Shown here piece by piece: positions 23,142-64,000 of a stretch of DNA of 64,000 nt (positions within the stretch are counted from its first letter, which is position 1; every line of letters starts with the position of its first letter). The notes beneath the pieces were generated by a model, which saw only the letters and a list, made by a program, of their open reading frames with translations, ran no database searches and was not told the origin of the DNA. The position numbers and the translations under genes are program-made. The DNA is taken from NCBI RefSeq assembly GCF_030028105.1, contig NC_092374.1, forward strand, positions 174,988,057 to 175,052,056, in the 5' to 3' direction. The DNA comes from Mobula birostris (taxonomy: Eukaryota).

Positions 23142-23193
23142 ATGGTGTTGCGTCTACTACTGCTGGCCCTCCTGTGTGGAGGGGTCTCCGCAG
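23142..23193 (+). CDS. MHC class I gene A exon 1, signal peptide MVLRLLLLALLCGGVSA
   Basis: ATG, hydrophobic core, G|GTGAGT phase-1 donor; paralogous to the gene B leader. Confidence 0.85.
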
Positions 23194-24959
23194 GTGAGTG
23201 AAGAGGCAATGGTCAGCGGGACATTCAGCCCCCGGTCAGTAGGTGAGCGGATGGACACAGCGTGATCGTCCCTCGTCAAGATGTCAAGGTCCCACGCCAC
23301 CCAGCCTGAGCACAATGAGTATCAGTGTGGGGGTAGGAGGTTGATGTGGTGGGAGCCCCCCCCCCAGAGACGGCACACGGGAGGGGAAGTAGCGAGGGAA
23401 GTGCGGGGGGGGGATGGGTTAACCTCGGCACCTTCACTGACCTGGGATGGAGATGGGCAGAGGTCTGATTTATAGCACGGTATGGACGAGCCAGTTCAGT
23501 CCTCCGTCCCCATGCTGGAGAACTGCTTCCTCCCGACACGTTCATGACTGCGGTAAAGCTGTGCAGCGGGAATTTCCGCAGCTTGGCCCAAGAGGACAGT
23601 TCGGACTGGGCTGTGCGAAGCAGGTTAAATGTGTTACAGGAGTGTCAGTAAGTGAAGCACCTTGGCATTGTCAAGGCATCTGATCATCAGACGGGTGTAT
23701 GTACTGGCCAACGCTGACCACCGTATCAGAGATAGTGTACTTGTCCAATCCCTCCCTCCTTCCCACCCACTCGTTTTTCTCAGTTTCCCAGTTCTGGACC
23801 TGAAACATTAACTATGGTGCTGGCTCAGCTGTTCAGAAATTCCAGCGTTTTCCGTTTCTGATGTTGGAGGGACAATGTGGGTAAAATGGTGGAACGGAGG
23901 TGCAACTGACCAGAGGGGGTTGTGCATAGATATACAACATCCCTCCTATACCTTTCCCAATCAAGCCCAGCTGAATCCCATCACCCCTACTGGGGCAGGG
24001 GCCGCCGACTGCAGATCGCTAGAATCCTAGCCAGTCTTTCAAGTTGTCCCCAGGTGCAGCCCAGCAGGTGTCTTCTAATCGAAGATCCTTCCTCGTCCAG
24101 AGATGAAATCTTCGGAGTTTCTGTCGCTCTGGGTTTTTACGGAATGAGGCTGCAAGCACCGTGCCTCCTTTCTTTCTCAGCCGGTCCTGGAACCGTCCTT
24201 GCCGGATTTTTCCTACTCAAGTGTCCAATTGCCTCTTAAATGCAATGCTCGGGTTAGTCTGCCCCACATCCTCAAAGTTCAAATGTCAATGTACATTTAT
24301 AATCAAAGTTTGTATACGTTATACTTGCGGTTCGTCTCCTAACAGGCAGCCACGAAAATAAATAAAACCTAAAAGAACCCATCTGAAAAAGACTGTCGAA
24401 CACCCAATGTGCGGAGGGGGGAAAATCCTCGTGCAAACAATAGCTGCAAGCACATAGCATTCTGAAATGAAGTCCGCCAACAGAGCCCCGTAGTTCAGCG
24501 CAGAGCAGAGTCACGGAGCAGCGATATGAACCAGCCCCTCCTTTGCCCCAGGCCCCCTCACCCTGACCTCTTCAACCTACCGGGAGCCAAAATCAAATAT
24601 AGGGTTCAATCGCCTCGATACCGCGCCGCCAAGATTCGGACTGTAACCAATCTTTCCGATTCGGCCCTGTGCTTGTCTCCTTTCAAACAATCGAGTCCAG
24701 TCTCTCCAATCCGCTCTGGTGCCCCGACCGCGCCGCCTCAATTCGGCCGGTAACTGACCTTTGTAATTCGAAAGATCGATCTTCGGGTCTTCCCCGCTCT
24801 CGGTGACGGGCCCAACGCCTCGGTTCTGCCCACATCAGATTGCCTCCGAGTCCAAAGGGAAGTTACAGGCTATTACTTGCCAAAAATATTGTGATTAACA
24901 AAGTATTTAATTGTTTTCCTTGTCTTGTTATCCACCAGCCTGAAGTCGCCAAGTCATCA

Positions 24960-27900
24960 GCGCCTTCTTCAACTCACCACTAGCAATGAATTTCAAATAC
25001 CAACACTCTCTGTGTAAATACAACAGATTTCCTGTAAAGCTGCTGCCTCTTACCTTAATTCTGACCCCAAGTTTTCATACCCCTATGAAAAGGATTTTGA
25101 TTTTCTATCCTATCTATGGCTCTTATCTTACATATCAGGTCACCTCTTGGCCTCCAATGGTATGCTGAGCAGCCATGTTCACAGTAGCCCGACCACTGTC
25201 TTATGCATTTCCATTATAGGGAGAATGAGATCTTCTTTACCTTCCCCATCTAGGATAATCCGAAAATTATCCGTACATCAAGAACAAAGGGCTAATTGGG
25301 GAGAGCAGATGTCCCTGAAGGATCAGTGTGGTTGTATATATGGGGAGCCAGAGGTCTCAAATAAATACTTCACATCTCCACTTAACTGGGGAGAAGGTCA
25401 GGTCCATGCTGGGGAACTCAGGAAAGACTACAGAGACATCCTGAAACATTTCAATATTACAAATGAGGTGTTGGTGTTCTTGAGGTGCATAAAAATGGAT
25501 AAATCCATGGGTCTGAATGAGAGTATCCGAGGATATTATAGGAATGAAGGCAGAAATTGGTAGGGCCCTGGGAGATCAGTTTCTTCAATAGACAAGGGTA
25601 TGGTACCAGAAGATTGGAAGATACCTGATGTTATCCTTTTATGCAAGAAAGATTGCATGGGCAAGCTGGGAACTACAGGCTGTTGAGCCTAATGTTAGTG
25701 TGGGAAAATGTACCAGATGGGATTCCGAGAAACTGGATCTACCTGTATTTGGAAAGGCAAGGGCTGTGAAACTGTTTCTCACAAATCTGACTGAAGTCTT
25801 TGGAGAGGGGACCAAGAGGATTGACAAGGGATTGGCAGTAGATGTTGCCAACATGGACTCCAGAAAGGCTTTTGATAACGTCCTACATGGTGGACAGGTC
25901 CAGAAAGTGAGAACATATGGGATCCAGGGTAAGCTAGCCAAATCAATATCAGTGGGACGAGTCAGAGTGTTGTCCTTTCATTTAGTTTTTGTCAGTAGCT
26001 TCCCTACTACTGCCCTGTACTTACCAGGACTTTCCCTTTTACCACAAAAGAACAATTATTCAAGATCACAGTTCATAAAGATCATTATCAGGCCCTATCA
26101 ATCTTATCTCTTGCGCCTCTCAATAACCTGGGTATATCCCAACAGGCCCTATGGACTTATCCACTTTCATGTGCTTCAAAGACCTTACATGACCTCTTTC
26201 TTTAGAAGCCCAGCTTCTTAGCATGTTGCACACTGACCTCATCGTGTTGGGTGCCACGGTAGTGGAGCAGTTAGTGTGACATTATCACAGCTCAGGGCAT
26301 CAGATTTCGGGCTTCAGTTCTAGCGTCTTCCTCAAGGAGTTTGTACTCCCTCCCCAGAGCATGCCTGGGTTTTCTCCGGGTACTCCAGTTTCATCCTACA
26401 GTCCAAAGATGTGCCAGTTAGTTGGTTAATTGGTCATTTTCAATTGATCTGTGATTAGGACTAGGCTAAAATTTAAATGGGGGTTGCTGGCAGTTTGGCT
26501 CGAAAGGCTGGAAGGGCTTGTCCTCTAAATAAATAAATAGACAGACAGGCATTGAAGAAGGTAACCAAACAGACAGCCTGTGCAGAGGATTGTCAAAAAT
26601 TACAGAGGGATCTTAGCCAGTGGTGTAAATGGTTCATGCAATGACAAATTAGTTCAGATAAGTATGAGGTTCCGCAATTTAGGAAATCAAATCCCGGCAT
26701 GACTTTCAAGGTGAATGGTTGGGAGTGTTGTCGAAGAGGTACCAGGGTCTTCAACTACAAAGTTCTCTGAAAGTGGCATCACAGGTAGATAGGGCGGCAA
26801 AGAAGGGTTTTGGCAAGTTCACCTTCATCAGTCAAGGCACTGAGTATGGAAATTGATTTATTATTTCTGGGACATTGGAGCAGTTTCATTTGGAGTATTG
26901 TGATCTGTTTTGGTCAGTCTGTTTCAGGAAAGAAGCCATTAAGTTGTAATGCACCAGAAGTGAGTTATGAGCATGTTCCTTGGGCTGGAAGGACTGTTAT
27001 GGAGAGTGGTTGAGTGGCTTGGGAGTTTTGTCATTGGAGATTAGGAGAATGAGGGATGATCTTGTCAAAGTGTGTAATGAACAGGATAGAGAATTGGTGG
27101 ATGCTGTGTACATGAATTTTCAGAAGACCATTGGCAAGGTGCCTCACACGAGGCTGTTTAACAAGGGACCATGGTATTACAGGAAAGATATCGCATGAAT
27201 CGCGCATTGGCTGATTGGCAGGAAGCTAGAAGTGGTAATAATAGAAGCCTTTTCTGTTTGGCTGCTGGTGACTAGTGCTGTCTGCAGGAGCTGGTGTTGG
27301 GAGCGCGTCTCTTTACCTTGTATGTCAATGATGTGCATGATGGAATTGATGGCTTTATGGCGCAGGTTGAGGATGACACAAAGATAGGTGGAGGGACAGG
27401 TAGTGGTGAGGAAGCAAGGGGTCGGCAGAAGCACTAGGCAGATTACGAGAAGGGACAAAGAAGTAGCGGATGGAATGCAGTGTTGGGAATTGTATGGTCA
27501 TGGATTTTGGTAGAAGGAGTAAAGGCATAGAATATTTTCTAAATGGAGAGAAAATTCACAAGTCTGAGGTGCAAAGGGATTCGGGAGTTCTTGTGCAGGA
27601 TTTCGTGGAAGGGAAATGCGATGTTAGCATTCATTTCGAGAGTACTAGAATATAAAAGCAAGGATGCTAAGGATGTTTAGAAAGTTAAGGCTTTCTAATG
27701 CACTGGTGAGGTCTCACTTGGAGAGTTGTGAGCAGTTCTGAGCCCCTTATTTAGGACAGGGTGTGCTGACATTGAAAAGGATTCAGAGGAGGTTCATGAG
27801 AATGATTCCGGGAATAATATCGTATGAGGAGTGACTGATGGCTCTGGGCTTGTGCTCGCCAGAATTTAGAAGAATGAGGAAGGATCTCATTGAAACCTTG

Positions 27901-28163
27901 AATGTTAAGATGGCGGTGCCTGCTCAATGGGCTGAATAGCTCATTGTGCTTCTATGCCTTCTGTTCTTATGGTAACATCTTGAGGGTGAATGCTCACAAT
28001 CTTTTTCCTAGTGTTGGGTGATCAAGACTTGTGGGAAAAGGTTTAAGGTGAAGGGAAGATAAGTTAACAAAGGGAAGCTTCTGCACCCAATGTGTGGCTC
28101 ATCTTTGCCAGAGAAGGTTCCAGATTAAGTGGTTGAGTCAGGTACATTAACAACATTTAAAAG
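24960..28163 (+). mobile_element. Multiple decayed CR1 LINE fragments (intron 1 of gene A)
   Basis: LFLTNLTEVF..T..IDKGLAVDVANMDSRKAFDNV; VDAVYMNFQKTIGKVPH. Confidence 0.65.
26245..26470 (+). mobile_element. tRNA-derived V-SINE-like element
   Basis: tRNA-like head followed by the gggttttctccgggtactccagtttcatcctacagtccaaagatgtgc V-domain-like core. Confidence 0.6.
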
Positions 28164-31100
28164 CTGCACACACAAAATGCTGGAAGAATTCAGCAGGCCA
28201 GGCAGCATCTATGGAAAAGAGTACAGTTGACGTGTCAGGCCGAAATACTTCTGCGGGACTGGAGGGAAAAAAAGCTCAGGAGTAGATTTGAAAGGTGTGG
28301 AGGGGGGGCGGTGGAGAGAAGCACCAGCTGATAGATGAAATCTGGAGGGCTGGGGGGGGGGAATGAAGTAAAGAGCTGTGAAGTTGGTTGGTGAAAGAGA
28401 CAGAAGAACATGGAAGAAAGAAAAAGGGTGAAGGACACCAGAGGGAGGCGATGGGTGGGTATGGAGACGAGGTGAGAGAGGGAAATGGAGATGGGAAATA
28501 GAGAAGGGGGGTTGGGGGCATTACTGGAAGTTCAAGAAATTGACCTTCATACCATCAGGTTGGAGGCTACCCAAACGGAATACAAGGTGTTGTTCCTCCA
28601 GCCTAAGTGTGGCCTCATCACGACAATGGAGGAGGCCATGGAGGGACATATTGGAGTAGGAATGGGAAGTGAAATTAAAATGGGTGGCCACTGGGAGATC
28701 CCGCTTGTTCTAGCGGATGGAGCATAGAAGCTCGGCGAAGCAGTCTTCCAATCTATGTTGTGTCTCACCGAAATACAGGAGGCCACACCGGTAGCACCGA
28801 ACGCAGCAAATGACCTCAACAAACTCACAGGTGAAGTGTCGCCTCACCTGGAAGTACTGTTTAGGGCCCTGGATAGTAGTGAGGGAGGAGGTATAGGGGC
28901 AGGTGTAGCACTTGTTTGGCTTGCAAGGATGAGTGCCAGGAGGGAGATCAGTGGGGAGGGATGAATGGATGAGGGAGTCATGCAGGAAGCGGAAAGTCAG
29001 GGGGGGGGGGAAATGTGCTTGGTGGTGCGATTCCGTTGGAGGTGGCGGAAGTTTTGGAGAATTATGTGCTGGATGCGGAGACTGGTGGGATGGTAGCTGA
29101 GGATAACAGGAACCCTATCCCAGGTAGGGTGGCCAGAGGAGGGAGGTTGGGGTAAGAGCAGACGTGCATGAAATGGAAGAGATGCCATTGAGGGCAGCAT
29201 TGATGGTGGAGGAATGGAAACCCCTTTCTTTGAAAAAGGATGACATCTCTTTCATTCTAGAATGAAAAGCATCATCCTGAGAGCAGATGCAGTGCAGGTG
29301 GGTAAATTGAGAAAAGGGGATGGCATTTTTACAAGTAGTAGCATGGGATGGGGTGTAGGCTAAGTGGCTGTGAGAGTCCATGGATTTGTAATAGACATCA
29401 GTAGATAAGCTGTCCCCAGAAATAGAGACAAAGAGATTGATAAAGGGAAGGGAGGTGTTGGAAATGGACCAGGCGAATTTAAGGGCAAGGTGGAAGTTGG
29501 AGGCAAAGTGGATGAAGTTGGCGAACTCTGCACGGCTGCAGGAAGCAGCACCAAAGCAGTCGTCGATGTTGCATAGGGAAAATGGGGGGCAGCCACCGGT
29601 GTCGGCTTGGAACATAGACCATTCCATGTAGCCAACAAAAAAGGCAGGCACAGCTGGGACCCATGCAAGTGCCCATGGCTACACCTTTTGCTTGAGGGAA
29701 GTGGGAGGAGCCAAAGGAGAAATTATTTAGAGTGGGGACAAGTTCCACTAAGTAGAGGAGAGTGGTGGTGTAGGGGAACTGGTTAGGTCTGATGTCCAGA
29801 AAAAACAGAGAGGTTCGAGGCCTTCCTGGTGGGGATGGAGGTGTATAGGGACTGGATATCCATAGTAAAAATAAGATGATGAGGGCGGGGAACTTGAAAT
29901 CCTTGAATAGATCAAGAGCGTGTGAGGTGTCACAGATGTAGGCGGGAAGGGACTAAACTGGGGGGATAAAACAGAATCGAGGTATGCAGATATGAGTTCA
30001 GTGGGGCAGGTACAAGCTGAAACAATGGGTCTACCTGGACAAACAGGTTTGTGGATCTTGGGTAAGAAGTAGAAACGGGAGGTGTGGGGTGCAGGAACTA
30101 TGAAGTTGGTGGCGGTGGGTGGGAGATCCCCAGAGTCAATAAGGTTGGTGATGGTGTGGGAGACAATGGCTTGGTTTTCCTTAGTGGGGTTCTGTTTGAG
30201 GGTAAGTAAGAGGTGTCTAAGAGTTGGCTCTGGACCTCAGCAAAGTAGAGGTCAGTACGTCAGACTACTACAGCGCCTCCCTTATCTGCGGGTTTGATGG
30301 TGAGGTTAGGATTAGAGCGAAGGGAGTGGAGAGCCGATCGTTCGGAAGAAATTGGGTTGGAATAGGAGAGAGGAGTATTAAAGTCTAGACAGCTAATATC
30401 ATGTCAACAGTTGGCAATGAAAAGGTCCAGAGCAGGTAGAAGACCAAGGTGGGGCATAAAGGAAGAGGAGAATGGTTGAAGATGGGAGAAGGGGTCATTG
30501 GTGCGTGGTGGAGATTCCTTGCCAAAGAAATAGGCTCGGAGATGGGGATGGCAGAAGAAGAGCTTAGCGTTGTGGCGGGTGTGGAACTCACTGAGTCGTG
30601 GGCACAGGGGGACAAAGCTGAGGCCCTTACTGAGGACAGAACATTCTGCCTCAGAGAGGGGGAGGTCAGAGGGAATGGTAAAGACCCGGCACGGATGGGA
30701 GCTGGGATCAGAGGTGGTTGGGGGTTGATAGTGTCTGAGGGGAAAGGAGGTTTGGGGTGTTCGGGATGGTGGAGGGAGAAAAGAGGGAGTCTCTGAGAGC
30801 CCAAGAGCTGGCGGTGGGATCTGAAAGAAACGGGATTGAGGAATGGCAGTGGGGGAGGGGGAGATGGGGGTGCCAGCAGCAGCTCCTGAAGACCCAGCAT
30901 GGAGGTCAAGGCCGGGGTTGGAGTTGCAGGTTGCACAATAGGCACTTTGGTGATGTCTGAGGTCATTGGAACCTGCACTCATGGTGGTGGAGTCCGGGTT
31001 TTGAATCTGCTCTGGATAGTTAGAGCCGTTGAGATCAGCAGCAGAGATCGCGGTCTGGAGGCGTCTGGGCCTGCTGGCGTAGGAGTCAATAGGTTTGGTG

Positions 31101-31909
31101 GTCTGTAGACGGGTGATCTTCCAATCCTTGCAGGACGTGAGAAAGTCGAAGAACCGGCGATTGAGAATCCCATTGAGCATCCTTGCAAGCGGAACAAGTG
31201 CTACACCTGCCCCTACACCTCCTCCCTCACTACCATTCAGGGCCCTAAACAGTCCTTCCAGGTGAGGCAACACTTCACCTGTGAGTCTGTTGGGATCATA
31301 TACTGTGTCCGGTGCTCCCGGTGTGGCCTCCTGTATATCAGTGAGACCCAATGTAGATTGGGAGACCGCTTTGCCAAGCATCTACTCTCCGTCCACCAGA
31401 ACAAGTGGGATCTCCCAGCGGCCACCCATTTTAATTCCACTGTTGTGATGAGGCCATATTTAGGTTAGAGGAACAGGTCGGTTATCCTCCAACCTGATGG
31501 CATGAACGTCGATTTCTCAAACTTCCAGTAATGTCCAACATCCCGCATCCCATCCCAACCATTTCCCATCCCCTTTTCCCTCTCTTATCTCATCTCCATG
31601 CCCACCCATCACCTCCCTCTGGTGTTCCTTCCCCCTTTTTCTTTCTTCGGTGGGCTTCTGTCTCTTTCACCAACCATCTTCCCAGGTCTTTACTTCATCC
31701 CTCCCACCCAAGTGTCACCTATCACCTGGTGTTCCTCTCCCCCGTCTCCCCACCTATGAAATCTACTCCTCAGCTTTTTTTTCTCCAGTCCTGCCGAAAG
31801 GTCCAAAGTACTTTTTCCACAGATGCTGCCTGGCCCGCTGAGTTCCTCCAGCATTTTGTGTGTGTTGCTCGGATTTCCAGCATCTGCGGGTCTCCTCTTG
31901 TTCGTAATT
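28164..31909 (-). mobile_element. Penelope-like element (RT plus GIY-YIG) with an inverted 3' copy at its 5' end
   Basis: KGVAMGTCMGPS.ACLF.G, .IDDC, SHPATTCKNAIPFSQF. The plus-strand copy at ~31170-31870 reads GIIYCVRCSRCGLLYI.ET..RLGDRFA.H. TSD taac/taacatttaaaag at 28148-28163 and 31910-31925 (1 mismatch). Confidence 0.85.
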
Positions 31910-32289
31910 TAATAACATTTAAAAGGTACTTTGATAGGTACATGGATAGGAAACAATCAAAGATCAATCTTGGCAGTTGTTTCTTTGGGAAATCAGTATC
32001 CAACATGGTATACTTGTTGAGAGGGCATTGATCTCTGAGTATTCCAGATACCACGTACCCGTCCTTACCGCCCTACCTGGTGGTTACCCACCTTCTCTTT
32101 CTGGGCCTGCAACGTGACCAGATCACTAGGTGAACCTTCTACCAGATTCTCTGCATCACAGTGAGTCCAGCAACCCTGTGTGGCCAGCGATGAGCTGTGG
32201 CTGGAGGCACATCCCGCAACAGTAGTTAATGAGGTGTGGAAATGTCTCTATACTCCCATATCCTGCAGACGCGACAGACCAATGTCCTC

Positions 32290-32483
32290 ATCTCGAATTC
32301 TTTTATCCCCAGTCTTTTCTACGTGCAGAGAAAATAGTTGCCTGCATGTGAGAGGAAATTGGAGCTCCGAGATGAAATCCACACATTCATGTGCAGAATG
32401 TACAAACTCCTTGCAGAGTTTAGCTGGAATTGAACCCAGATCCTTGCCACTACAAGGTGCTATGCTAACCACTACATTACTGT
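32290..32483 (-). mobile_element. tRNA-derived V-SINE-like element
   Basis: Minus-strand A box tagtggttag, B box ggttcaattcc, then a V-domain-like core. Confidence 0.6.
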
Positions 32484-35808: not shown

Positions 35809-36007
35809 GTGAGTGCATGGGGTGGGGTCAATGTGTGTGCCAGGGAGTGGAAGTCAGTGTCTGCAACCCCCATCTCCACCCTCCCCTGCCCACCCCTTCC
35901 CACCTTCACTGCCCCCGTCACCTCCTCTGCAACACCCCCCACGCAGTCTCCTCTTCCCATCACCTTCCTACCTCCACTCAATGCTTCCTCTTTCTCTCCC
36001 ACCCCAG

Positions 36008-36271
36008 ATCCCCCCGAAGTCTCGTTCACCGCCTCCGAGGACGGCCGCCACCTCTCCTGTGTGGCCACTGGATTCTACCCTCAGTCCATCGACATGACTA
36101 TTCTGCGGGACGGCCGGATCCTGGAGGAGACCCATTCCCACGGGATCCTCCCCAATCACGACAACACCTACCAGCTGACCAGGACGGTGCGGGTGGAGCC
36201 CACGGACACAATAAAGTTCTCCTGTCGGGTGGAACACCGGAGTCTCTCCGAGCCCCTCGTCCTGTTCCTCG
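36008..36271 (+). CDS. MHC class I gene A alpha3 (C1-set Ig) exon, cassette 1
   Basis: PPEVSFTASEDGRHLSCVATGFYPQSIDMTILRDG..ILPNHDNTYQL..FSCRVEHRSLSEPLVLFL G|GTAAG; 264 nt. Confidence 0.95.
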
Positions 36272-37278
36272 GTAAGAAACACCACTGGTTGTGCGGTACA
36301 TGGGCGTCCAGTGTCGCCCATCTTCACCCCACCATTCCCCACCACGTTTCCTTCTCGCATTATAACAGTATCCGTGTTGTCTCGGCCTCTCTCTGTAGGG
36401 TCATGGAGAAGAACTGTATAGTACAGTATTGGCCCTTTGGCCCACAAAGTTGTGCCGACCTCTTAACCCACTCCACGGTCAATCTAACACATCCCTCTCA
36501 CAAATTGTCCATTTTTCTTTCATCCATGTGCCTAACTAAGAGTCTCTGATCTGTCCTTAATGTGTCAGTCTCCATCACGACCACAGCAGTGTTCTATGCT
36601 CTCCTCTGACATCGCCCCGACACTTTCTGCAATCACCTTAAAAAGATGTTCTTTGGTATTAGGCGTTGCTTCTTGGTTAAGGCAAAAGCTGGTTGTCCAC
36701 ATTATCTGTGCCTCTTATCGTCTCATAGACTAACTGTCACTTTGTGCTCTACTTTCCCCCAGTGCAAGAGTCAGCGGGTCAGACTGTATGGAATTAGTTC
36801 CTTCGGCCTGACCTCAGTTCTCAGCTGGTCTCTCCGCTGACAGCAGGGAGAAACTTAACCAGGGAGGGAGCACAGACGAGTCCTCACCCCGTTTGGGAGT
36901 TTTCCCACCTGCTCTGAGCACATCCCTATCCTCACAGAGCCACTTACCCTGACCTCAGAGAGACACACTGATGATTGAACCCAGTCTGGTCTGGGTGAAC
37001 ATGTCTTGTTTCATAACCCCGCTCCATCACCAGGTTGGGACACCACAGCTCATGGATATAGGCAGCTCAGCCAGGGATCTGCAGATGTGACCAGGGATTT
37101 GGACTCTCACTGTCTTCAGGTGCGGTTCAAATGCCCCTTGGGGTGAGCGGTCAGTCCTGATTCTCTGGTTTTAGGACTCTGATTCTCTCAGGGGGTTGGG
37201 GATGAAGCCCAGCATCTTGGGTCTCAGGGTCCTGGTTTCAGGTATAAGTTATTCTCTGACTCTCAGATCCAGTTTCAG

Positions 37279-37539
37279 GCACTCACTCTCTCCGTTATTT
37301 CTACACGGCGGTGACCCCGGGGTCGGGGGTCCCTGAGTTCATTACCGTCAGGTATGTGGATGAGTTGTTGATCAGTTACTACGACAGTGTGTTGAGACGG
37401 ACGGTTCCCCGTCAGCAGTGGATGGCGGAGACTCAGGGACCTGACTACTGGGAACGGGAGACAAGGATCTCTCAGGGTTATGAGCAGTGGGCCCAGGCCG
37501 AAATCCAGACCCTCATGAACCGGACCAACCAGACGCGTG
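37279..37539 (+). CDS. MHC class I gene A alpha1 exon, cassette 2
   Basis: tttcag|GTHSLRYF...VDELLISYYDSVLRRTV...YWERETRISQGYEQWAQAEIQTLMNRTNQTR G|GTGAG; 261 nt, open. Confidence 0.92.
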
Positions 37540-37769
37540 GTGAGTGGGGAAACATGTTGGGGGGAGGGGTGGCAGAGGGGAACACACAGTTGTGGGGATT
37601 AGGTGGGTGATGGCAGGCATGGTGTTGTGGTTGGGGGGGGCTGATGGTAGAGATGGTGGGGTGGGGAGGGGTGTGGACGGTGACGGTGGGGTTTGTGGGG
37701 TGGTGGAGGTGATAGTAGTGATTGGGTGGGGCATGCAATGGACTGAGGTAGGGGTGCTGGCTGTGACAT

Positions 37770-38500
37770 TAGCGATTGTGGGCTGTGAAGTGAGGGATGG
37801 TGGGTGTTAGCCGGGGTGACATTAGGGATTGTGGGGTGGCAGGAGTGACGTTAGGGCACGTGGGAAAGGTGGCAGGGATGGCATTAGGGATTGGGTGGCG
37901 GGGGTGTTGTTGGGCGTTGTTGGGTATGGCAGGGGTGATGTTAGGGATCTTGGGGTTGGAGGGGTGTTGTTGGGAATTGTGGGGTATAGCAGGGGTGACG
38001 TTAGGGATCATGGGGGGGTGGTAGAGGCGACATTAGGGATTGTGGGGTGCAGGGGTGATGTTAGGGTATGTGGGAGGGATGGCAGGTAGACATTCGAAAT
38101 TGTGGTGACGGGGTGTTGGGGATTGTTGGGGATGGTAGGGGAGAGGTTAGGGATCATGGGGATGTACGGGGTGACGTTAGGGATCTTGGGGATGTACAGG
38201 GGTGATGTTAGGGATCATGGGGGTGTACAGAAGTGACATTAATGATCATGGGGGTGTACAGGGGTGAAGTTAGGTATCATGGGGGTGTACAGGGGTGAAG
38301 TTAGGGATCATGGGGATGTACAGAGGTGACGTTAGTGATCATGGGGGTGTACAGGAGTGACATTAATGATCATGGGGGTGTACAGAGGTGAAGTTAGTGA
38401 TCATGGGGATGTACAGGGGTGAAGTTAGTAATCATGGGGGTGTACAGGGGTGAAGTTAGTGATCATGGGGTTGTACAGGGGTGACGTTAGTGATCATGGG
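37770..38500 (+). repeat. G-rich 31-bp minisatellite (cassette 2)
   Basis: Period 31 checked at 38341, 38372 and 38403. Confidence 0.85.
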
Positions 38501-39274
38501 GGTGTGCAGGGGGCTGCGGGAGGGATGGTGTGGGTGTCGTCAGTGATTTTGCAAGGGGTGGCAGGGGTGATGTTAGGGATTGTGGGGCTGGCGGGGGTGA
38601 CAATGGTGATTGTGTGGGGGTGATGGTTGATGGTAGGTTTTGAGCGGGGTGGGGGTGAGAATAGGGGCAGTGTGGGGGTAGGATGTTGACAAAGAATGTT
38701 TGGGTGAGGGGGTGATGATAGGGAATGTGCAGGGGTGTGGGAGGTGATGGGGGAGAGTGTGGGTGTGAGGGGGGAGGGAGTGACATTAGGGACCGTATGG
38801 GGTGGGGTGTGTTGGGAATTGTAGGGCTGGTCGGGGTGACGTAAGGATTTGTGGTGGTGGGATGGCAGGGATTGTGTGGGGTGACAGTGGGGATTTTGGA
38901 GATGGATGTGATGGTGGGTTTTGTCTGGGGGCTGAAGGTGGGGATCATACGGGTGGGGAGGGGTGGGGTGATGGTAGAGACGGGGCAGGAGTCAGATGCA
39001 GTGGTGGGGAGAGAGAGTGACGGTAGGGTGTGGGTGGGGACCGTGTTGGAGGTGAGGGGTGACATGGAAGGTGATGGTAGGGATGGGTCAACGGTGGGTT
39101 GCGGTGAAGAAGTGACGGTGGGGTCTGTGCAGCGGTGACAGTAGGGACTGTGAAGGCTGGGGGAACGTGTGGGGGAATATTGGTTCTGCCTGGGGGAGCG
39201 GAAGTAAAAGCCACATCTGCAGGATGGAAAGTTGTCCACAACCCCACAACTCGCCAATGGATGATGTGTTCCAG

Positions 39275-39547
39275 GGATCCACTTTCTCCAGAGGATGTCC
39301 GGCTGTGAGCTCCGTGATGACGGGACCTCCACCGGGTTCCTGCAGTACGGCTGGGACGGGTCAGACTTCATCACCTTCGACAAGGACCGGATGGTGTGGG
39401 TGACCCCTGTGCCCTGGGGTGTCATCACCAAGGACAAGTGGGATCGGGACACGGCCATGAACCAGGGTTGGAAGGGATACCTGGAGCAGACCTGCATCAA
39501 ATGGCTGACGAAATACGTCAAGGCTGGGGGTAGTCACCTGAAACCCA
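39275..39547 (+). CDS. MHC class I gene A alpha2 exon, cassette 2
   Basis: As cassette 1 except TCIKWL in place of TCIEWL; splice sites intact. Confidence 0.93.
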
Positions 39548-39746
39548 GTGAGTGCATGGGGTGGGGTCAATGTGTGTGCCAGGGAGTGGAAGTCAGTGTC
39601 TGCAACCCCCATCTCCACCCTCCCCTGCCCACCCCTTCCCACCTTCACTGCCCCCGTCACCTCCTCTGCAACACCCCCCACGCAGTCTCCTCTTCCCATC
39701 CCCTTCCTACCTCCACTCAATGCTTCCTCTTTCTCTCCCACCCCAG

Positions 39747-40010
39747 ATCCCCCCGAAGTCTCGTTCACCGCCTCCGAGGACGGCCGCCACCTCTCCTGTG
39801 TGGCCACTGGATTCTACCCTCAGTCCATCGACATGACTATTCTGCGGGACGGCCGGATCCTGGAGGAGACCCATTCCCATGGGATCCTCCCCAACCAGGA
39901 CAACACCTACCAGCTGACCAGGACGGTGCGGGTGGAGCCCACGGACACAACAATGTTCTCCTGTCGGGTGGAACACCGGAGTCTCTCCGAGCCCCTCGTC
40001 CTGTTCCTCG
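39747..40010 (+). CDS. MHC class I gene A alpha3 exon, cassette 2
   Basis: PPEVSF..LSCVATGFYP..ILPNQDNTYQL..TTMFSCRVEHRSLSEPLVLFL; splice sites intact. Confidence 0.93.
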
Positions 40011-41017
40011 GTAAGAAACACCACTGGTTGTGCGGTACATGGGCGTCCAGTGTCGCCCATCTTCACCCCACCATTCCCCACCACGTTTCCTTCTCGCATT
40101 ATAACAGTATCCGTGTTGTCTCGGCCTCTCTCTGTAGGGTCATGGAGAAGAACTGTATAGTACAGTATTGGCCCTTTGGCCCACAAAGTTGTGCCGACCT
40201 CTTAACCCACTCCACGGTCAATCTAACACATCCCTCTCACAAATTGTCCATTTTTCTTTCATCTATGTGCCTAACTAAGAGTCTCTGATCTGTCCTTAAT
40301 GTGTCAGTCTCCATCACGACCACAGCAGTGTTCTATGCTCTCCTCTGACATCGCCCCGACACTTTCTGCAATCACCTTAAAAAGATGTTCTTTGGTATTA
40401 GGCGTTGCTTCTTGGTTAAGGCAAAAGCTGGTTGTCCACATTATCTGTGCCTCTTATCGTCTCATAGACTAACTGTCACTTTATGCTCTACTTTCCCCCA
40501 GTGCAAGAGTCAGCGGGTCAGACTGTATGGAATTAGTTCCTTCGGCCTGACCTCAGTTCTCAGCTGGTCTCTCCACTGACAGCAGGGAGAAACTTAACCA
40601 GGGAGGGAGCACAGACGAGTCCTCACCCCGATTGGGAGTTTTCCCACCTGCTCTGAGCACATCCCTATCCTCACAGAGCTACTTACCCTGACCTCAGAGA
40701 GACACACTGATGATTGAACCCAGTCTGGTCTGGGTGAACATGTCTTGTTTCATAACCCCGCTCCATCACCAGGTTGGGACACCACAGCTCATGGATATAG
40801 GCAGCTCAGCCAGGGATCTGCAGATGTGACCAGGGATTTGGACTCTCACTGTCTTCAGGTGCAGTTCAAATGCCCCTTGGGGTGAGCGGTCAGTCCTGAT
40901 TCTCTGGTTTTAGGACTCTGATTCTCTCAGGGGGTTGGGGATGAAGCCCAGCATCTTGGGTCTCAGGGTCCTGGTTTCAGGTATAAGTTATTCTCTGACT
41001 CTCAGATCCAGTTTCAG

Positions 41018-41278
41018 GCACTCACTCTCTCCGTTATTTCTACACGGCGGTGACCCCGGGGTCGGGGGTCCCTGAATTCATTACCGTCAGGTATGTGGAT
41101 GAGTTGTTGATCAGTTACTACGACAGTGTGTTGAGACGGACGGTTCCCCGTCAGCAGTGGATGGCGGAGACTCAGGGACCTGACTACTGGGAACGGGAGA
41201 CAAGGTTCTCTCAGGGTTATGAGCAGTGGGCCCAGGCCGAAATCCAGACCCTCATGAACCGGACCAACCAGACGAGTG
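41018..41278 (+). CDS. MHC class I gene A alpha1 exon, cassette 3
   Basis: GTHSLRYF...YWERETRFSQGYEQWAQAEIQTLMNRTNQTS G|GTGAG; 261 nt, open. Confidence 0.92.
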
Positions 41279-41499
41279 GTGAGTGGGGAAACATGTTGGG
41301 GGGAGGGGTGGCAGAGGGAACACACAGGTGTGGGGATTAGGTGGGTGATGGCAGGCATGGTGTTGTGGTTGGGGGGGGCTGATGGTAGAGATGGTGGGGT
41401 GGGGAGGGGTGTGGACGGTGACGGTGGGGTTTGTGGGGTGGTGGAGGTGATGGTAGTGATTGGGTGGGGCATGCAATGGACTGAGGTGGGGGTGCTGGC

Positions 41500-42240
41500 T
41501 GTGACATTAGCGATTGTGGGCTGTGAAGTGAGGGATGGTGGGTGTTAGCCGGGGTGACATTAGGGATTGTGGGGTGGCAGGAGTGACGTTAGGGCACGTG
41601 GGAAAGGTGGCAGGGATGGCATTAGGGATTGGGTGGCGGGGGTGTTGTTGGGCGTTGTTGGGTATGGCAGGGGTGATGTTAGGGATCTTGGGGTTGGAGG
41701 GGTGTTGTTGGGAATTGTGGGGTATAGCAGGGGTGACGTTAGGGATCATGGGGGGGTGGTAGAGGCGACATTAGGGATTGTGGGGTGCAGGGGTGATGTT
41801 AGGGTATGTGGGAGGGATGGCAGGTAGACATTCGAAATTGTGGTGACGGGGTGTTGGGGATTGTTGGGGATGGTAGGGGAGACGTTAGGGATCATGGGGG
41901 TGTACAGGGGTGACGTTAGTGATCTTGGGGATGTACAGGGGTGACATTAGTGATCATGGGGGTGTACAGGGGTGACGTTAGGGATCTTGGGGATGTACAG
42001 GGGTGATGTTAGGGATCATGGGGGTGTACAGGAGTGACATTAATGATCATGGGGGTGTACAGGGGTGAAGTTAGGGATCATGGGGATGTACAGGGGTGAC
42101 ATTAGTGATCATGGGGGTGTACAGGGGTGAAGTTAGTGATCATGGGGATGTACAGGGGTGACGTTAGTAATCATGGGGGTGTACAGGGGTGAAGTTAGTG
42201 ATCATGGGGTTGTACAGGGGTGACGTTAGTGATCATGGGG
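41500..42240 (+). repeat. G-rich 31-bp minisatellite (cassette 3)
   Basis: Same unit as in cassettes 1 and 2. Confidence 0.85.
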
Positions 42241-43014
42241 GTGTGCAGGGGGCTGCGGGAGGGATGGTGGGGGTGTCGTCAGTGATTTTGCAAGGGGTGG
42301 CAGGGGTGATGTTAGGGATTGTGGGGCTGGCGGGGGTGACAATGGTGATTGTGTGGGGGTGATGGTTGATGGTAGGTTTTGAGCGGGGGTGGGGGTGAGA
42401 ATAGGGGCAGTGTGGGGGTAGGATGTTGACAAAGAATGTTTGGGTGAGGGGGTGATGATAGGGAATGTGCAGGGGTGTGGGAGGTGATGGGGGAGAGTGT
42501 GGGTGTGAGGGGGGAGGGAGTGACATTAGGGACCGTATGGGGTGGGGTGTGTTGGGAATTGTAGGGCTGGTCGGGGTGACGTAAGGATTTGTGGTGGTGG
42601 GATGGCAGGGATTGTGTGGGGTGACAGTGGGGATTTTGGAGATGGATGTGATGGTGGGTTTTGTCTGGGGGCTGAAGGTGGGGATCATACGGGTGGGGAG
42701 GGGTGGGGTGATGGTAGAGACGGGGCAGGAGTCAGATGCAGTGGTGGGGAGAGAGAGTGACGGTAGGGTGTGGGTGGGGACCGTGTTGGAGGTGAGGGGT
42801 GACATGGAAGGTGATGGTAGGGATGGGTCAACGGTGGGTTGCGGTGAAGAAGTGACGGTGGGGTCTGTGCAGCGGTGACAGTAGGGACTGTGAAGGCTGG
42901 GGGGACGTGTGGGTGAATATTGGTTCTGCCTGGGGGAGCGGAAGTAAAAGCCACATCTGCAGGATGGAAAGTTGTCCACAACCCCACAACTCGCCAATGG
43001 ATGATGTGTTCCAG

Positions 43015-43287
43015 GGATCCACTTTCTCCAGAGGATGTCCGGCTGTGAGCTCCGTGATGACGGGACCTCCACCGGGTTCCTGCAGTACGGCTGGGACGGG
43101 TCAGACTTCATCACCTTCGACAAGGACCGGATGGTGTGGGTGACCCCTGTGCCCTGGGGTGTCATCACCAAGGACAAGTGGGATCGGGACACGGCCATGA
43201 ACCAGGGTTGGAAGGGATACCTGGAGCAGACCTGCATCGAATGGCTGACGAAATACGTCAAGGCTGGGGGTAGTCACCTGAAACCCA
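43015..43287 (+). CDS. MHC class I gene A alpha2 exon, cassette 3
   Basis: Protein identical to cassette 1 alpha2; AG/GT intact. Confidence 0.93.
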
Positions 43288-43509
43288 GTGAGTGCATGGG
43301 GTGGGGTCAATGTGTGTGCCAGGGAGTGGAAGTCAGTGTCTGCAACCCCCCTCTCCACCCTCCCCTGCCCACCCCTTGCCGCCTCCTCTGCCCACCCCTT
43401 CCCACCTTCACTGCCCCCGTCACCTCCTCTGCAACACCCCCCACGCAGTCTCCTCTTCCCATCCCCTTCCTACCTCCACTCAATGCTTCCTCTTTCTCTC
43501 CCACCCCAG

Positions 43510-43767
43510 ATCCCCCCGAAGTCTCGTTCACCGCCTCCGAGGACGGCCGCCACCTCTCCTGTGTGGCCACTGGATTCTACCCTCAGTCCATCGACATGAC
43601 TATTCTGCGGGACGGCCGGATCCTGGAGGAGACCCATTCCCATGGGATCCTCCCCAACCAGGACAACACCTACCAGCTGACCAGGACGGTGCGGGTGGAG
43701 CCCACGGACACAACAATGTTCTCCTGTCGGGTGGAACACCGGAGTCTCTTCCTCGTCCTGTTCCTCG
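43510..43767 (+). CDS. MHC class I gene A alpha3 exon, cassette 3 (in-frame 6-nt deletion near the end)
   Basis: ...FSCRVEHRSLFLVLFL G|GTAAG; 258 nt versus 264. Confidence 0.92.
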
Positions 43768-44880
43768 GTAAGAAATACCACTGGTTGTGCGGTACATGGG
43801 CGTCCAGTGTCGCCCATCTTCACCCCACCATTCCCCACCACGTTTCCTTCTCCCATTATAACAGTATCCGTGTTGTCTTGGCCTCTCTCTGTAGGGTCAT
43901 GGAGCAGAACTGTATAGTACAGTACTGGCACTCTGGCCCACAAAGTTGTTCCGACCTCTTAACCCACTCCACGGTCAATCTAACACATCCCTCTCGCAAA
44001 TTGTCCATTTTTCTTTCATCCATGTGCCTAACTAAGAGTCTCTGATCTGTCCTTAATGTGTCAGTCTCCATCACGACCACAGCAGTGTTCTATGCTCTCC
44101 TCTGACATCGCCCCGACACTTTCTGCAATCACCTTAAAAAGATGTTCTTTGGTATTAGGCGTTGCTTCTTGGTTAAGGCAAAAGCTGGTTGTCCACATTA
44201 TCTGTGCCTCTTATCGTCTCGTAGACTAACTGACACTTTGTGCTCTACTTTCCCCCAGTGCAAGAGTCAGCGGGTCAGACTGTATGGAATTAGTTCCTTC
44301 GGCCTGACCTCTCATTAATGATCACATATTTGCATATCTGATCCCATTTCCTTGCCATCTCTATCTTGGTTATTCATATACCTGTCTAGATCTATCCTCA
44401 GTGATATGAGAGTCTGCCTTCTCCACTTCTTCAGTGTGTTTGATTCCAGCCACTCCCTGGGTTTGGGTGAAACATTCCTTCCTCCGGTCACTCCCAGTGA
44501 TCTTGCTCCTCACTGACCGATTCTGATCTTGGACTCCTCTGCTCCGGGAAATCAGTTCCTCCTACCTGCCCCACCTGAGCCTCTCATTACCGTGTGCATC
44601 CATACCTGGTGAACCTGACCAGGGTCAGGGTCAGTATTAGGGTAAATGGTCACTCCAAACCTCCCACTGACCACTCTGTCACACACCAGCTTTGTTCTGT
44701 CTCATGGCCTTACAATGAGTTCGGGCACCTGGTGATCCTGTTGGATGTGTCTCCTTTCACAGCTTGTACCTTGAGTTCTGTTTGATTGGGATTCAGAGCT
44801 CACTGGGCAGGAGATGAATCTATCTGGTTATAAGCTGGGGATGTGGGACCATTCTCATTGACTGTCTCTGTGTTTTACAG

Positions 44881-44910
44881 CCGGGGACAATGGCTACAAT
44901 CCAACTAAAA
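44881..44910 (+). CDS. MHC class I gene A cytoplasmic exon (AGDNGYNPTK)
   Basis: gtgttttacag|...A|GTATGT; 30 nt, phase 1-1. The GYNP motif is typical of fish class I tails. Confidence 0.75.
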
Positions 44911-45178
44911 GTATGTTCACTGTAAATCACAGCTGGATGGTTGTGTGACATTGTTCATGTTCACTGGGTCTCATCAACAGAACAGGGGTTCTGTGCGTGT
45001 GTGTGTCTCTGTGTCTGTGTGTACAACACCTTTGTGCATGTCTCTGTCGGTGTGTGTGATTATCCGTATATACCTGTGTTTGTGCAGTGGTGTATTGTAT
45101 GCATGTGGCTGTCTTTGTTTCTCCGTGTCTGCACTGCATTGGTAGTAAATACTTTCCTGCCTGTCCTTCCATTCACAG

Positions 45179-45225
45179 CTTCTGACAAAGGAGAATCCTT
45201 CTCCAACTCCTCTGCCATGGCCTGA
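45179..45225 (+). CDS. MHC class I gene A last coding exon (TSDKGESFSNSSAMA*)
   Basis: ccattcacag| acceptor, serine-rich SD..S.SNSSA tail, TGA followed by a G|GTAGG donor. Confidence 0.78.
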
Positions 45226-63894: not shown

Positions 63895-64000
63895 GTAGGA
63901 CTGGAGGGAGATGTACTGTTCCCCAGGGGAAGTGAGTTTGGGAAGGAGAATGTCGTCTCGGCACTCCAGCCTCTCTACTCAAAAGGATGCCCTGTCCTCA

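What the first reader, a model, noticed from the sequence alone, without database searches (positions are those of the whole stretch)
23142..45225. One MHC class I transcription unit with three tandem alpha1-alpha2-alpha3 cassettes
Seen: there is one leader and promoter (23142) and one set of tail exons (44881, 45179). Between them are three complete alpha1/alpha2/alpha3 sets, all nine exons open with intact AG/GT and phase 1-1. I found no leader-like or tail-like exon inside the duplicated units. Inference: splicing leader + 9 exons + 2 tail exons gives 2517 nt, about 838 aa, i.e. a chain with three peptide grooves and three Ig domains. Alternatively, whole cassettes could be used mutually exclusively or mixed, giving several grooves from one promoter. 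Established: class I heavy chains normally carry a single alpha1-alpha3 set, and I know of no described multi-groove class I chain.
Basis: partly seen in the sequence, partly recalled or inferred. Interest (0 to 1): 0.92.

Follow-up and report, generated by a model that had tools for sequence, protein, structure and literature searches.

The report
Manta ray three-groove secreted MHC-I gene
A manta ray gene strings three complete MHC class I peptide-binding units behind one signal peptide with no membrane anchor, and it is spliced that way in RNA; no published description was found, and it would act like a natural soluble "MHC multimer".

Summary

**Structure.** Window 23142-45225 (Mobula birostris) holds one leader exon, a 10-kb intron and a clean tandem triplication of a 3.74-kb unit. 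The units are 32886-36815, 36816-40554 and 40555-44311. Each carries open, phase 1-1 alpha1, alpha2 and alpha3 exons. No leader or transmembrane (TM) exon lies anywhere inside or after the array.

**Match to a public model.** The spliced window sequence translates exactly to RefSeq model XP_072115023.1, an "uncharacterized protein" of 836 aa.

**RNA evidence.** An RNA contig from the same species joins an alpha3 end by GT..AG to a cassette-2-type alpha1, then to alpha2. Another contig joins the cassette-3-type alpha3 directly to the last coding exon and skips the intact 30-nt exon at 44881.

**Other species.** The same architecture is assembled independently in M. hypostoma (3 cassettes), Hypanus sabinus (2) and Pristis pectinata (3). 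Each lineage has its own linker at internal cassette junctions only.

**Conservation.** All 33 alpha exons are open. Classical peptide-anchoring residues, disulfides and glycosylation sites are kept, and no hydrophobic segment follows the signal peptide.

**Not shown.** Secretion, beta2-microglobulin (beta2m) binding, peptide loading and function are inferred. The third cassette of this individual rests on the assembly and could not be confirmed from raw reads.

I found no paper describing this. The scan's other notes on this window agree.

The parts
22860..23141 (+). Class I-type promoter region with CCAAT/Y-box motifs (CTGATTGG, GACCAATCAG)
   Evidence: Conserved in an alignment with the multi-cassette genes of M. 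hypostoma, Hypanus and Pristis, and with ordinary class I promoters.
23142..23193 (+). Leader exon encoding the signal peptide MVLRLLLLALLCGGVSA, ending in phase 1 at a G|GTGAGT donor
   Evidence: 89% identical to the leader of ordinary class I protein P0011. It is the first exon of the model that equals P0129.
23194..33347 (+). Intron 1, 10.15 kb and rich in repeats
   Evidence: The matching introns are 7.9-13.7 kb in the other three species. The leader-to-alpha1 splice itself was not in the stretch where reads were laid.
32886..36815 (+). Tandem unit 1 (3930 nt), containing cassette 1
   Evidence: Self-BLAST breakpoints and repeat families D2-D10.
33348..33608 (+). Cassette 1 alpha1 exon (ancestral EEQI motif)
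   Evidence: Pfam MHC_I E 6.5e-21; AG/GT flanks.
35536..35808 (+). Cassette 1 alpha2 exon
   Evidence: Pfam MHC_I E 3e-23; GTGAGT donor.
36008..36271 (+). Cassette 1 alpha3 exon (C1-set Ig domain)
   Evidence: Pfam C1-set E 3e-13.
36816..40554 (+). Tandem unit 2 (3739 nt), containing cassette 2
   Evidence: The inter-cassette stretches 1-2 and 2-3 are 99.4% identical.
37267..37539 (+). Cassette 2 alpha1 exon, including a 12-nt 5' extension (DPVS linker) made by a derived upstream AG
   Evidence: An X9 RNA contig joins alpha3 to this acceptor. Its three letter differences from cassette 3 match the number of sites at which cassettes 2 and 3 differ. The AG is absent from cassette 1, Hypanus and Pristis.
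39275..39547 (+). Cassette 2 alpha2 exon
39747..40010 (+). Cassette 2 alpha3 exon
   Evidence: the joint 40010->41006 in RNA.
40555..44311 (+). Tandem unit 3 (3757 nt), containing cassette 3
41006..41278 (+). Cassette 3 alpha1 exon with the same 12-nt linker extension
   Evidence: Its three private letters were not seen in any contig laid.
43015..43287 (+). Cassette 3 alpha2 exon
   Evidence: The alpha1->alpha2 joint 41278->43015 is seen in RNA runs X9 and X10.
43510..43767 (+). Cassette 3 alpha3 exon, with a 6-nt in-frame deletion near its end
   Evidence: An X9 RNA joint runs 43767->45179.
44881..44910 (+). Intact 30-nt cytoplasmic-tail-type exon (GDNGYNPTK), phase 1-1; skipped in the one 3' junction seen in RNA and in all RefSeq models
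45179..45226 (+). Last coding exon (A-SDKGESFSNSSAMA, stop codon 45223-45225), followed by a donor leading to 3'UTR exon(s)
   Evidence: (joints and loose ends at 45226/7).
33988..34778 (+). G-rich 31-nt minisatellite in the alpha1-alpha2 intron; the same array recurs at 38137-38512 and 41864-42251

Best explanation
This is a genuine, transcribed derivative of the classical-type MHC class I gene family of rays.

**How it arose.** The exon block alpha1-alpha2-alpha3 was duplicated in tandem inside one transcription unit, and the transmembrane exon was lost. All alpha exons are phase 1-1, so the spliceosome joins each alpha3 to the next alpha1 in frame.

**The product.** The mRNA encodes a signal peptide, three complete class I ectodomains joined by 4-residue DPVS linkers, and a 15-residue hydrophilic tail. 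That is 836 aa, about 94 kDa before glycans.

**Shown here.** The gene structure; the alpha3->alpha1->alpha2 and alpha3->last-exon splices in RNA; exact identity of the spliced sequence to a RefSeq model; presence in four ray species; an intact ORF; and conserved class I structural and peptide-anchoring residues.

**Inferred.** The chain enters the ER and each cassette folds like an ordinary class I ectodomain. Each would then pair with beta2m and load a peptide. Lacking any anchor, the complex would be secreted as a soluble, trivalent (in Hypanus bivalent) peptide-MHC-I. Its most likely role is as a high-avidity soluble ligand or decoy for class I receptors on T or NK-type cells, with an immunomodulatory effect.
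For: **Structure.** The triplication has a single junction type. There is no internal leader or TM exon. All exons have AG/GT flanks, and the spliced translation equals P0129 (XP_072115023.1) exactly.

**RNA.**
- X9 contig record 25 (473 nt, word depth 723) consists of 53 nt of alpha3, a GT..AG joint 40010->41006, a full alpha1, the joint 41278->43015, and 147 nt of alpha2.
- Its alpha1 shows 3 letters unlike cassette 3; two are listed (41076 G, 41206 A). Cassettes 2 and 3 differ at exactly three positions in this exon (41076, 41206, 41275), so the contig is most simply cassette 2's alpha1.
- X9 also has the joint 43767->45179 at depth 1568.
- X10, RNA of a coded related organism about 96% identical (probably M. 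hypostoma), has alpha3->45179 and alpha1->alpha2 joints, and contigs crossing the unit junction 40554/40555.
- Intron bins have zero depth in X9, so the contigs are not from contaminating DNA.

**Cross-species.**
- The M. hypostoma locus has three cassettes with the same breakpoints. Hypanus has two and the Pristis genome has three.
- All 33 alpha exons are open.
- Exons show 0 indels where about 7 are expected from flanking-intron rates between Mobula and Hypanus.
- The probability of no stop codon under random substitution is 0.05 (Mobula vs Hypanus) to 0.003 (vs Pristis) per cassette.

**Linkers only at internal junctions.**
- Mobula has a derived AG before the internal alpha1 exons.
- Pristis has a 27-nt in-frame insertion at the end of its internal alpha3 exons.
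- Hypanus uses a 30-nt exon as linker.

**Protein features.**
- The only hydrophobic window is the signal peptide. Each cassette has four Cys, and an NQT site falls at the same place in each.
- Alignment to the closest solved structure, a class I chain (6LUP, E 1e-103), keeps the Y7, Y59, R84, T143, K146, W147, Y159 and Y171 equivalents.
- Few positions conserved in ordinary class I are changed.
Against: - There is no protein-level evidence.
- There is no full-length cDNA. Contigs cannot show that one molecule carries all three cassettes, and the leader->alpha1 splice was outside the laid stretch.
- Only one contig in one run shows the alpha3->alpha1 joint. A back-splice (circular RNA) would give the same junction, although linear splicing is far simpler here.
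- Cassette-3-private letters (41206 T, the 23-nt insert near 43365) appear in no DNA or RNA contig. DNA word depth over the cassettes (12-14) is not above the flank (6-30). Logan contigs drop near-identical variants, so this is uninformative, not contrary.
- Constraint is weak. dN/dS between species is 0.47-0.88, and exon divergence is about equal to intron divergence.
- RefSeq also lists exon-skipping isoforms that would break a groove.
Confidence: 0.85

Rival explanations
1. The locus is a transcribed but functionless relic. A class I gene lost its TM exon and gained internal duplications, and it is spliced by default. Its product is unstable or irrelevant, and the gene is drifting toward pseudogenisation.
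For: dN/dS is high at 0.47-0.88 between species and about 1 between the Pristis cassettes and the ordinary Pristis gene. Exon divergence is about equal to intron divergence. Exon-skipping isoforms are modelled. Cassette 3 carries a 6-nt deletion at the alpha3 end.
Against: - All 33 alpha exons in four species are free of stops and frameshifts, while introns accumulate indels.
- Positions conserved in ordinary class I are almost all kept.
- Linkers evolved only at internal junctions, in three different ways.
- The derived TTG-TTG/AGG/CGG motif and a K->Q change are shared by Mobula and Hypanus, so the gene predates their split.
- High dN/dS is usual for class I genes.
Confidence: 0.1
2. The cassettes are used mostly one at a time or shuffled, in mutually exclusive or mixed fashion. 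The gene would then yield several ordinary-sized soluble class I chains with different grooves from one promoter.
For: All exons are phase 1-1, so any combination stays in frame. RefSeq isoforms X2-X5 and Hypanus X5 skip single exons. Cassette differences fall largely in alpha1, 12 of the 18 differences between cassettes 1 and 2.
Against: The observed RNA contig joins alpha3 to the next alpha1 at depth 723, against 1568 for the 3' terminal junction. No listed joint or RefSeq isoform drops a whole cassette or joins the leader to an internal alpha1. Dedicated internal linkers make sense only for concatenated chains.
Confidence: 0.07
3. The third cassette of this M. birostris assembly is an assembly over-expansion of a true two-cassette gene, for example by stacking alleles of cassette 2.
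For: Cassettes 2 and 3 are 99.4% identical. The private letters of cassette 3's alpha1 and its 23-nt intron insert are in none of the laid contigs, and DNA depth is not raised. Hypanus has only two cassettes.
Against: - An independent assembly of M. hypostoma has three cassettes with the same breakpoints, and Pristis also has three.
- The cassette-3-type alpha3 end is joined to the last exon in RNA run X9.
- Logan contigs collapse near-identical copies, so absence proves nothing.
- Even if true, a two-groove chain remains.
Confidence: 0.06
4. It is an annotation artefact in which neighbouring separate class I genes are fused by read-through. That is what the long shark and teleost models are.
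For: Such fused models are common. The three shark models inspected (P0046 Mustelus, P0094, P0121) contain internal leaders and TM segments. The long teleost models in the same search were not inspected.
Against: Here there is no leader or TM sequence between cassettes. The 1007-nt spacer is purely intron-derived. The alpha3->alpha1 splice is seen in RNA.
Confidence: 0.02

Closest known systems
Classical-type elasmobranch MHC class I heavy chains (UAA lineage). The closest solved structure is PDB 6LUP; an ordinary gene lies at 56158-64000 of this window (P0007).
   Same: Leader/alpha1/alpha2/alpha3 exon plan in phase 1. A cassette is 68-83% identical per exon to an ordinary stingray class I protein, P0011, and matches 6LUP at E 1e-103. 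Peptide-terminus anchoring residues, disulfides and the N86 glycan site are the same. The promoter is of class I type, and the locus lies among class I genes.
   Different: Three ectodomain sets per chain instead of one, no transmembrane exon, and alpha3 spliced directly to the last tail exon. Derived G->R, EQ->LL and K->Q changes in alpha1.
Naturally soluble class I molecules. Salmon Sasa-ULA is called soluble in PMC2846915; mouse Q10, HLA-G5 and exon-5-skipped soluble HLA are from my own knowledge.
   Same: A signal peptide and a class I ectodomain without a membrane anchor. As in exon-5-skipped HLA, alpha3 is joined to cytoplasmic-tail coding sequence.
   Different: Those carry one groove per chain. 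Any multivalency (HLA-G dimers) comes from disulfides, not from a concatenated polypeptide.
Engineered peptide-MHC multimers (dimers, tetramers) and single-chain class I constructs, for example PMC10794645
   Same: Several class I ectodomains held in one soluble particle, which is what gives laboratory multimers stable binding to low-affinity receptors.
   Different: Those are man-made, held by streptavidin or Fc, and present a single allele. This is a germline-encoded head-to-tail chain whose grooves differ slightly.
RefSeq Gnomon models: XP_072115023.1 (M. birostris, 836 aa), XP_062904366.1 (M. hypostoma, 838 aa), XP_059826596.1 (H. sabinus, 573 aa) and LOC127585898 (P. pectinata, 573 aa)
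   Same: The first is exactly the product of this window. The others are the same architecture in other rays.
   Different: They are automatic predictions labelled 'uncharacterized protein' or 'hereditary hemochromatosis protein homolog', with no published analysis that I could find. The Pristis model uses only two of the three genomic cassettes.

Membership tests
MHC class I heavy chain | alpha1-alpha2 peptide-binding superdomain (Pfam PF00129) | tested here: met
   All alpha1 exons tested and the alpha2 exon exceed the gathering score (E 1e-20 to 1e-23). One search shows all nine exons open and homologous.
MHC class I heavy chain | Membrane-proximal C1-set Ig domain (alpha3) | tested here: met
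   PF07654 at E 3e-13, 50 bits against a cutoff of 21.
MHC class I heavy chain | Two conserved intradomain disulfides and the N86 glycosylation site | tested here: met
   exactly four Cys per cassette at identical spacing, and an NQT site at the same place in each cassette.
MHC class I heavy chain | Exon plan with separate leader, alpha1, alpha2 and alpha3 exons, all phase 1 | tested here: met
MHC class I heavy chain | One alpha1-alpha2-alpha3 set per polypeptide | tested here: not met
   Three sets in one ORF. The alpha3->alpha1 splice is seen in RNA.
MHC class I heavy chain | Transmembrane anchor after alpha3 | tested here: not met
   No TM exon by tblastn at E<=10. The best hydropathy window is the signal peptide. 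In Pristis the TM exon lies inverted.
Classical (peptide-presenting) class I | Conserved residues binding the peptide termini (Y7, Y59, R/Y84, T143, K146, W147, Y159, Y171) | tested here: met
   Alignment of cassette 1 to 6LUP. The same residues are in cassettes 2 and 3. The numbering equivalence to HLA is from my own knowledge.
Classical (peptide-presenting) class I | beta2-microglobulin association and peptide loading | not testable with these tools
   Few positions conserved in ordinary class I are changed, but binding itself needs biochemistry.
Classical (peptide-presenting) class I | High allelic polymorphism | not tested
   Only one haplotype per species was available.
Soluble class I molecules (Q10, ULA, sHLA type) | Signal peptide present, no membrane anchor or GPI signal | tested here: met
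   The C-terminus SNSSAMA is hydrophilic.
Fused read-through gene models | Leader and TM/cytoplasmic segments between successive ectodomains | tested here: not met
   in contrast to P0046, P0094 and P0121.

The most novel reading that the evidence does not exclude
Rays have evolved a germline-encoded soluble multivalent peptide-MHC-I at least twice: once in the stingray/manta lineage and once in sawfish. Each origin has its own way of losing the TM exon and its own linker. The protein would be secreted with two or three beta2m and peptides and act as a natural 'MHC multimer'. It would engage CD8/TCR or NK-type receptors with high avidity to tune or silence lymphocytes. All four carrier species bear live young (my own knowledge), so a role in tolerance between mother and embryo is one conceivable use.
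Probability: 0.25. Interest if true: 0.95.

Novelty: new variant of a known kind. Interest (0 to 1): 0.85.

Why it matters
Every class I heavy chain described so far has one groove. Multivalent soluble peptide-MHC is known only as a laboratory reagent or as weak disulfide dimers.

A conserved gene encoding two or three grooves on one secreted chain would be a new molecular format in antigen-presentation biology. It occurs in one of the oldest jawed-vertebrate lineages. It gives a direct handle on what soluble class I does in vivo, and it may be an example of repeated evolution of the same architecture.

It is also directly testable. The cDNA is defined, the species have reference genomes and RNA data, and the protein should be detectable in body fluids.

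Tried and rejected
- **Frameshift in the small exon.** I first misread the exon at 44881 as 31 nt and frame-shifting. Reading the sequence showed it is 30 nt and in frame.
- **Assembly artefact for the whole array.** Rejected on four independent assemblies and on the RNA splice evidence.
- **Fused neighbouring genes.** Rejected because no leader or TM lies between cassettes. The long shark models inspected (Mustelus, Stegostoma, Scyliorhinus) are such fusions and are not relatives of this architecture.
- **Copy number from DNA contig depth.** Uninformative. Depths are summed across contigs, and near-identical copies collapse.
- **Junction-spanning protein fragments.** A search with alpha3+linker+alpha1 in the 5.8-billion protein set found none beyond ordinary class I.
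- **Literature.** Five searches found no description of the gene. The cartilaginous-fish MHC paper PMC10751288 mentions Pristis once, only for the span of its class Ia region. It has no occurrence of 'soluble', 'secreted' or 'transmembrane'.
- **Whole-cassette protein tree.** Cassettes cluster by genus, so the tree alone cannot separate independent origins from concerted evolution. Rare shared motifs and the alpha1-only DNA tree were used instead.
- **Structure prediction.** Not run. The tool returns no inter-domain error map and cannot include beta2m, so it could not test the points that matter.

Full report
**Observation.** The window has no N. Positions 32886-44311 are a head-to-tail triplication with a period of about 3739 nt and copies 94-100% identical.

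Self-BLAST shows one clean junction type. The 1007-nt spacer between cassettes consists of the 544 nt that follow alpha3 joined to the 462 nt that precede alpha1. The units are therefore 32886-36815, 36816-40554 and 40555-44311.

Each unit carries an alpha1, alpha2 and alpha3 exon with AG/GT flanks. The lengths are 261, 273, and 264 nt (258 in cassette 3), so all are phase 1-1. They match Pfam MHC_I and C1-set well above threshold.

A leader exon (23142-23193) lies 10 kb upstream. Two tail-type exons follow the array, at 44881-44910 and 45179-45225.

tblastn with an ordinary stingray class I protein, on both strands at E<=10, finds no other leader or tail piece in the units and no transmembrane exon anywhere after them. 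It readily finds the TM exon of the ordinary class I gene that starts at 56158.

**Identity of the locus.** A protein search returned RefSeq models with repeated class I domains from rays. Cluster look-up gave the longest isoforms:
- XP_072115023.1, Mobula birostris, 836 aa
- XP_062904366.1, M. hypostoma, 838 aa
- XP_059826596.1, Hypanus sabinus, 573 aa

The following exons of the window translate exactly to the M. birostris protein: 23142-23193, 33348-33608, 35536-35808, 36008-36271, 37267-37539, 39275-39547, 39747-40010, 41006-41278, 43015-43287, 43510-43767 and 45179-45225. The window is therefore giant manta ray, and the gene is already modelled automatically, as an "uncharacterized protein".

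**RNA evidence.** All runs were available only as Logan contigs. I laid two RNA runs of the same species (X9, X12), one RNA run of a coded related organism about 96% identical (X10, probably M. hypostoma), and one DNA run (X1) on 39700-45300.
- In X9 a 473-nt contig (word depth 723) has four parts. They are 53 nt of an alpha3 end, a GT..AG joint 40010->41006, a complete alpha1, and the joint 41278->43015 into 147 nt of alpha2.
It adds Asp-Pro-Val-Ser between the domains.
- The contig's alpha1 shows three letters unlike cassette 3, and two of them are listed (41076 G, 41206 A). Cassettes 2 and 3 differ at exactly three positions in this exon (41076, 41206, 41275). The contig is therefore most simply alpha3 (cassette 1, or identical cassette 2) -> alpha1 (cassette 2) -> alpha2.
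- A second X9 contig joins 43767 to 45179 (depth 1568). This is the cassette-3-type alpha3 end spliced straight to the last coding exon, giving ...LVLFL-A-SDKGESFSNSSAMA-stop and skipping the intact 30-nt exon.
- X10 shows alpha3->45179 and alpha1->alpha2 joints. It also has contigs that cross and break at the unit junction 40554/40555, as expected for a tandem repeat in that organism too.
- Intron bins have zero depth in X9, so genomic DNA is not the source.

The limits of this evidence are as follows:
- Exon depths are dominated by ordinary class I paralogues.
- The leader->alpha1 splice lay outside the stretch.
- Only one contig shows the alpha3->alpha1 joint, and a back-splice would look the same.
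- Contigs cannot prove that one molecule has three cassettes.
- Letters private to cassette 3 (41206 T, a 23-nt intron insert) were in no contig, and DNA depth gave no copy-number signal. Collapsing of near-identical copies is a sufficient explanation, but the third copy in this individual is not independently verified.

**Other species.** I fetched the loci for M. hypostoma (L002), Hypanus (L003) and Pristis (L001).
- M. hypostoma has three cassettes with the same breakpoints (548|465). Its two spacers are 100% identical to each other.
- Hypanus has two cassettes in a ~6-kb unit that includes the 30-nt exon.
- The Pristis genome has three cassettes, although its RefSeq model uses two.
- None has a sense-strand TM exon.
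- In Pristis an intact TM exon lies inverted about 420 nt after the last alpha3. It is 87% identical to the TM exon of the ordinary Pristis gene.
- All 33 alpha exons are open.

Linkers exist only where one cassette is followed by another, and they differ by lineage.
- In both Mobula species the internal alpha1 exons have a derived upstream AG (ctctcAG|ATCCAGTT...). It is absent from cassette 1, Hypanus and Pristis.
- In Pristis the two internal alpha3 exons carry a 27-nt in-frame insertion before the unchanged donor, giving a proline-rich DLPEPIPQ-type linker. The terminal alpha3 does not carry it.
- In Hypanus the 30-nt exon serves as linker in isoform X1, and its second copy has a stop.

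I read this position-specific remodelling as the best indirect sign that the concatenated polypeptide is what selection sees.

**Selection and age.** Pairwise dN/dS is 0.47-0.67 between the two Mobula species, 0.66-0.88 between Mobula and Hypanus, and 0.58-0.67 against Pristis. Exon divergence is about the same as intron divergence. Constraint on amino-acid sequence is therefore weak or mixed with diversifying change, as is common for class I.

The reading frame, however, is protected. There are no exon indels, against about 7 expected from flanking-intron rates between Mobula and Hypanus. The chance of no stop codon under random substitution is 0.05 to 0.003 per cassette comparison.

In a protein tree, cassettes cluster by genus. 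That fits either concerted evolution or separate origins. Rare shared characters help to resolve this:
- A four-nucleotide GAG-CAG -> TTG-TTG change, together with AGG and CGG codons, occurs in cassette 2 of Hypanus and in cassettes 2 and 3 of M. birostris. It also occurs in all three M. hypostoma cassettes, and in no other of the 129 class I proteins collected.
- A K->Q change is shared by all eight Mobula and Hypanus cassettes.
- In an alpha1-only DNA tree, Hypanus cassette 2 groups with the Mobula cassettes to the exclusion of Hypanus cassette 1, with 88/96 support.

The two-cassette gene therefore probably predates the manta/stingray split and has since been partly homogenised.

Pristis lacks these marks. 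Its cassettes are only dS 0.07-0.09 from the ordinary Pristis gene, against about 0.3 from Mobula. Its promoter also matches that ordinary gene. Either it arose independently or it has been converted by the classical locus. I lean toward independent origin but cannot decide.

**Predicted protein.**
- The only hydrophobic window is the signal peptide (score 1.9, against 3.7 for the TM of an ordinary chain).
- The mature mass is 94 kDa and the pI 5.4.
- Each cassette has exactly four cysteines and the conserved glycosylation site. There is no spare cysteine and no GPI-type tail.
- The closest solved structure is a class I chain, 6LUP (E 1e-103). The alignment keeps the residues that hold peptide termini in classical molecules.
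- Few positions conserved in 26 ordinary elasmobranch class I proteins are altered.
- Differences between cassettes lie mostly in alpha1, 12 of the 18 between cassettes 1 and 2. By my recollection of HLA numbering, several fall at helix positions facing the groove (62, 66, 70, 77). That agrees with another note of this scan but rests on few sites.
- The LL and G->R changes lie on the underside of the alpha1 sheet, near where beta2m sits in known structures (own knowledge). Whether internal cassettes bind beta2m normally is open.

**Mechanism.**
- Shown: internal tandem duplication of a phase-symmetric exon block, loss of the anchor exon, in-frame splicing alpha3->alpha1 and alpha3->tail, and a class I-type promoter.
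- Inferred: ER entry, folding of each unit with beta2m and peptide, and secretion as a bi- or trivalent soluble complex.
- Speculative: action as a high-avidity ligand or decoy for class I receptors. All four species are live-bearing (own knowledge), so this could concern tolerance of embryos. No data here address tissue or function.

**Novelty.** Ten-plus years of fish MHC reviews and the recent cartilaginous-fish MHC paper were searched by full text without finding such a gene. Soluble single-groove class I molecules are known, for example salmon ULA (PMC2846915). Long multi-domain models in sharks, and probably teleosts, are read-through fusions with internal leaders and TMs.

This is a new architecture within a known family. 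It is present in public annotation but apparently undescribed.

Noticed in passing
window 22689-22736 (minus strand): A second, divergently oriented class I leader-like exon with an intact GTGAGT donor lies about 400 bp upstream of the gene's ATG, apparently sharing the promoter. Its start codon is ATA in M. birostris but ATG in M. hypostoma (L002:5548-5601) and Hypanus (L003:5556-5609). No matching alpha exons were found in the window.
   Followed up: partly
window 56158-64000: An ordinary class I gene identical to RefSeq protein P0007. Leader at 56158, alpha1 at 62410, alpha2 at 62812, alpha3 at 63257 and TM exon at 63792. It runs off the end of the window.
   Followed up: partly
window 53959-55431 (minus strand): A 491-aa ORF with a reverse transcriptase domain (RVT_1, E 1e-31). 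It is a retroelement between the two class I genes.
   Followed up: no
window 33988-34778, 38137-38512, 41864-42251: A G-rich 31-nt minisatellite fills much of every alpha1-alpha2 intron. It accounts for the strong positive GC skew of the region and for most length differences between units.
   Followed up: no
window 40074-40260 and 44001-44187: A ~190-nt very high-copy repeat with DNA word depth about 30,000 in run X1. Many contigs break there, and it lies about 300 nt before the unit boundary. Whether it had a role in the duplication is untested.
   Followed up: no
window 44337-45208: RNA contigs in X9, X12 and X10 cover this intron-plus-exon stretch at only about 94-96% identity. They point to a transcribed paralogous or allelic copy elsewhere.
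   Followed up: no
L001:35707-35802 (Pristis pectinata): A complete, open TM exon with splice sites lies inverted just after the last alpha3 of the sawfish multi-cassette gene. A 42-nt tandem repeat follows each alpha3.
   Followed up: partly
L003:22742-22771 and 29337-29366 (Hypanus sabinus): The 30-nt cytoplasmic-type exon lies inside the duplicated unit. The first copy is used as an inter-cassette linker in RefSeq isoform X1. The second copy carries a stop codon.
   Followed up: partly
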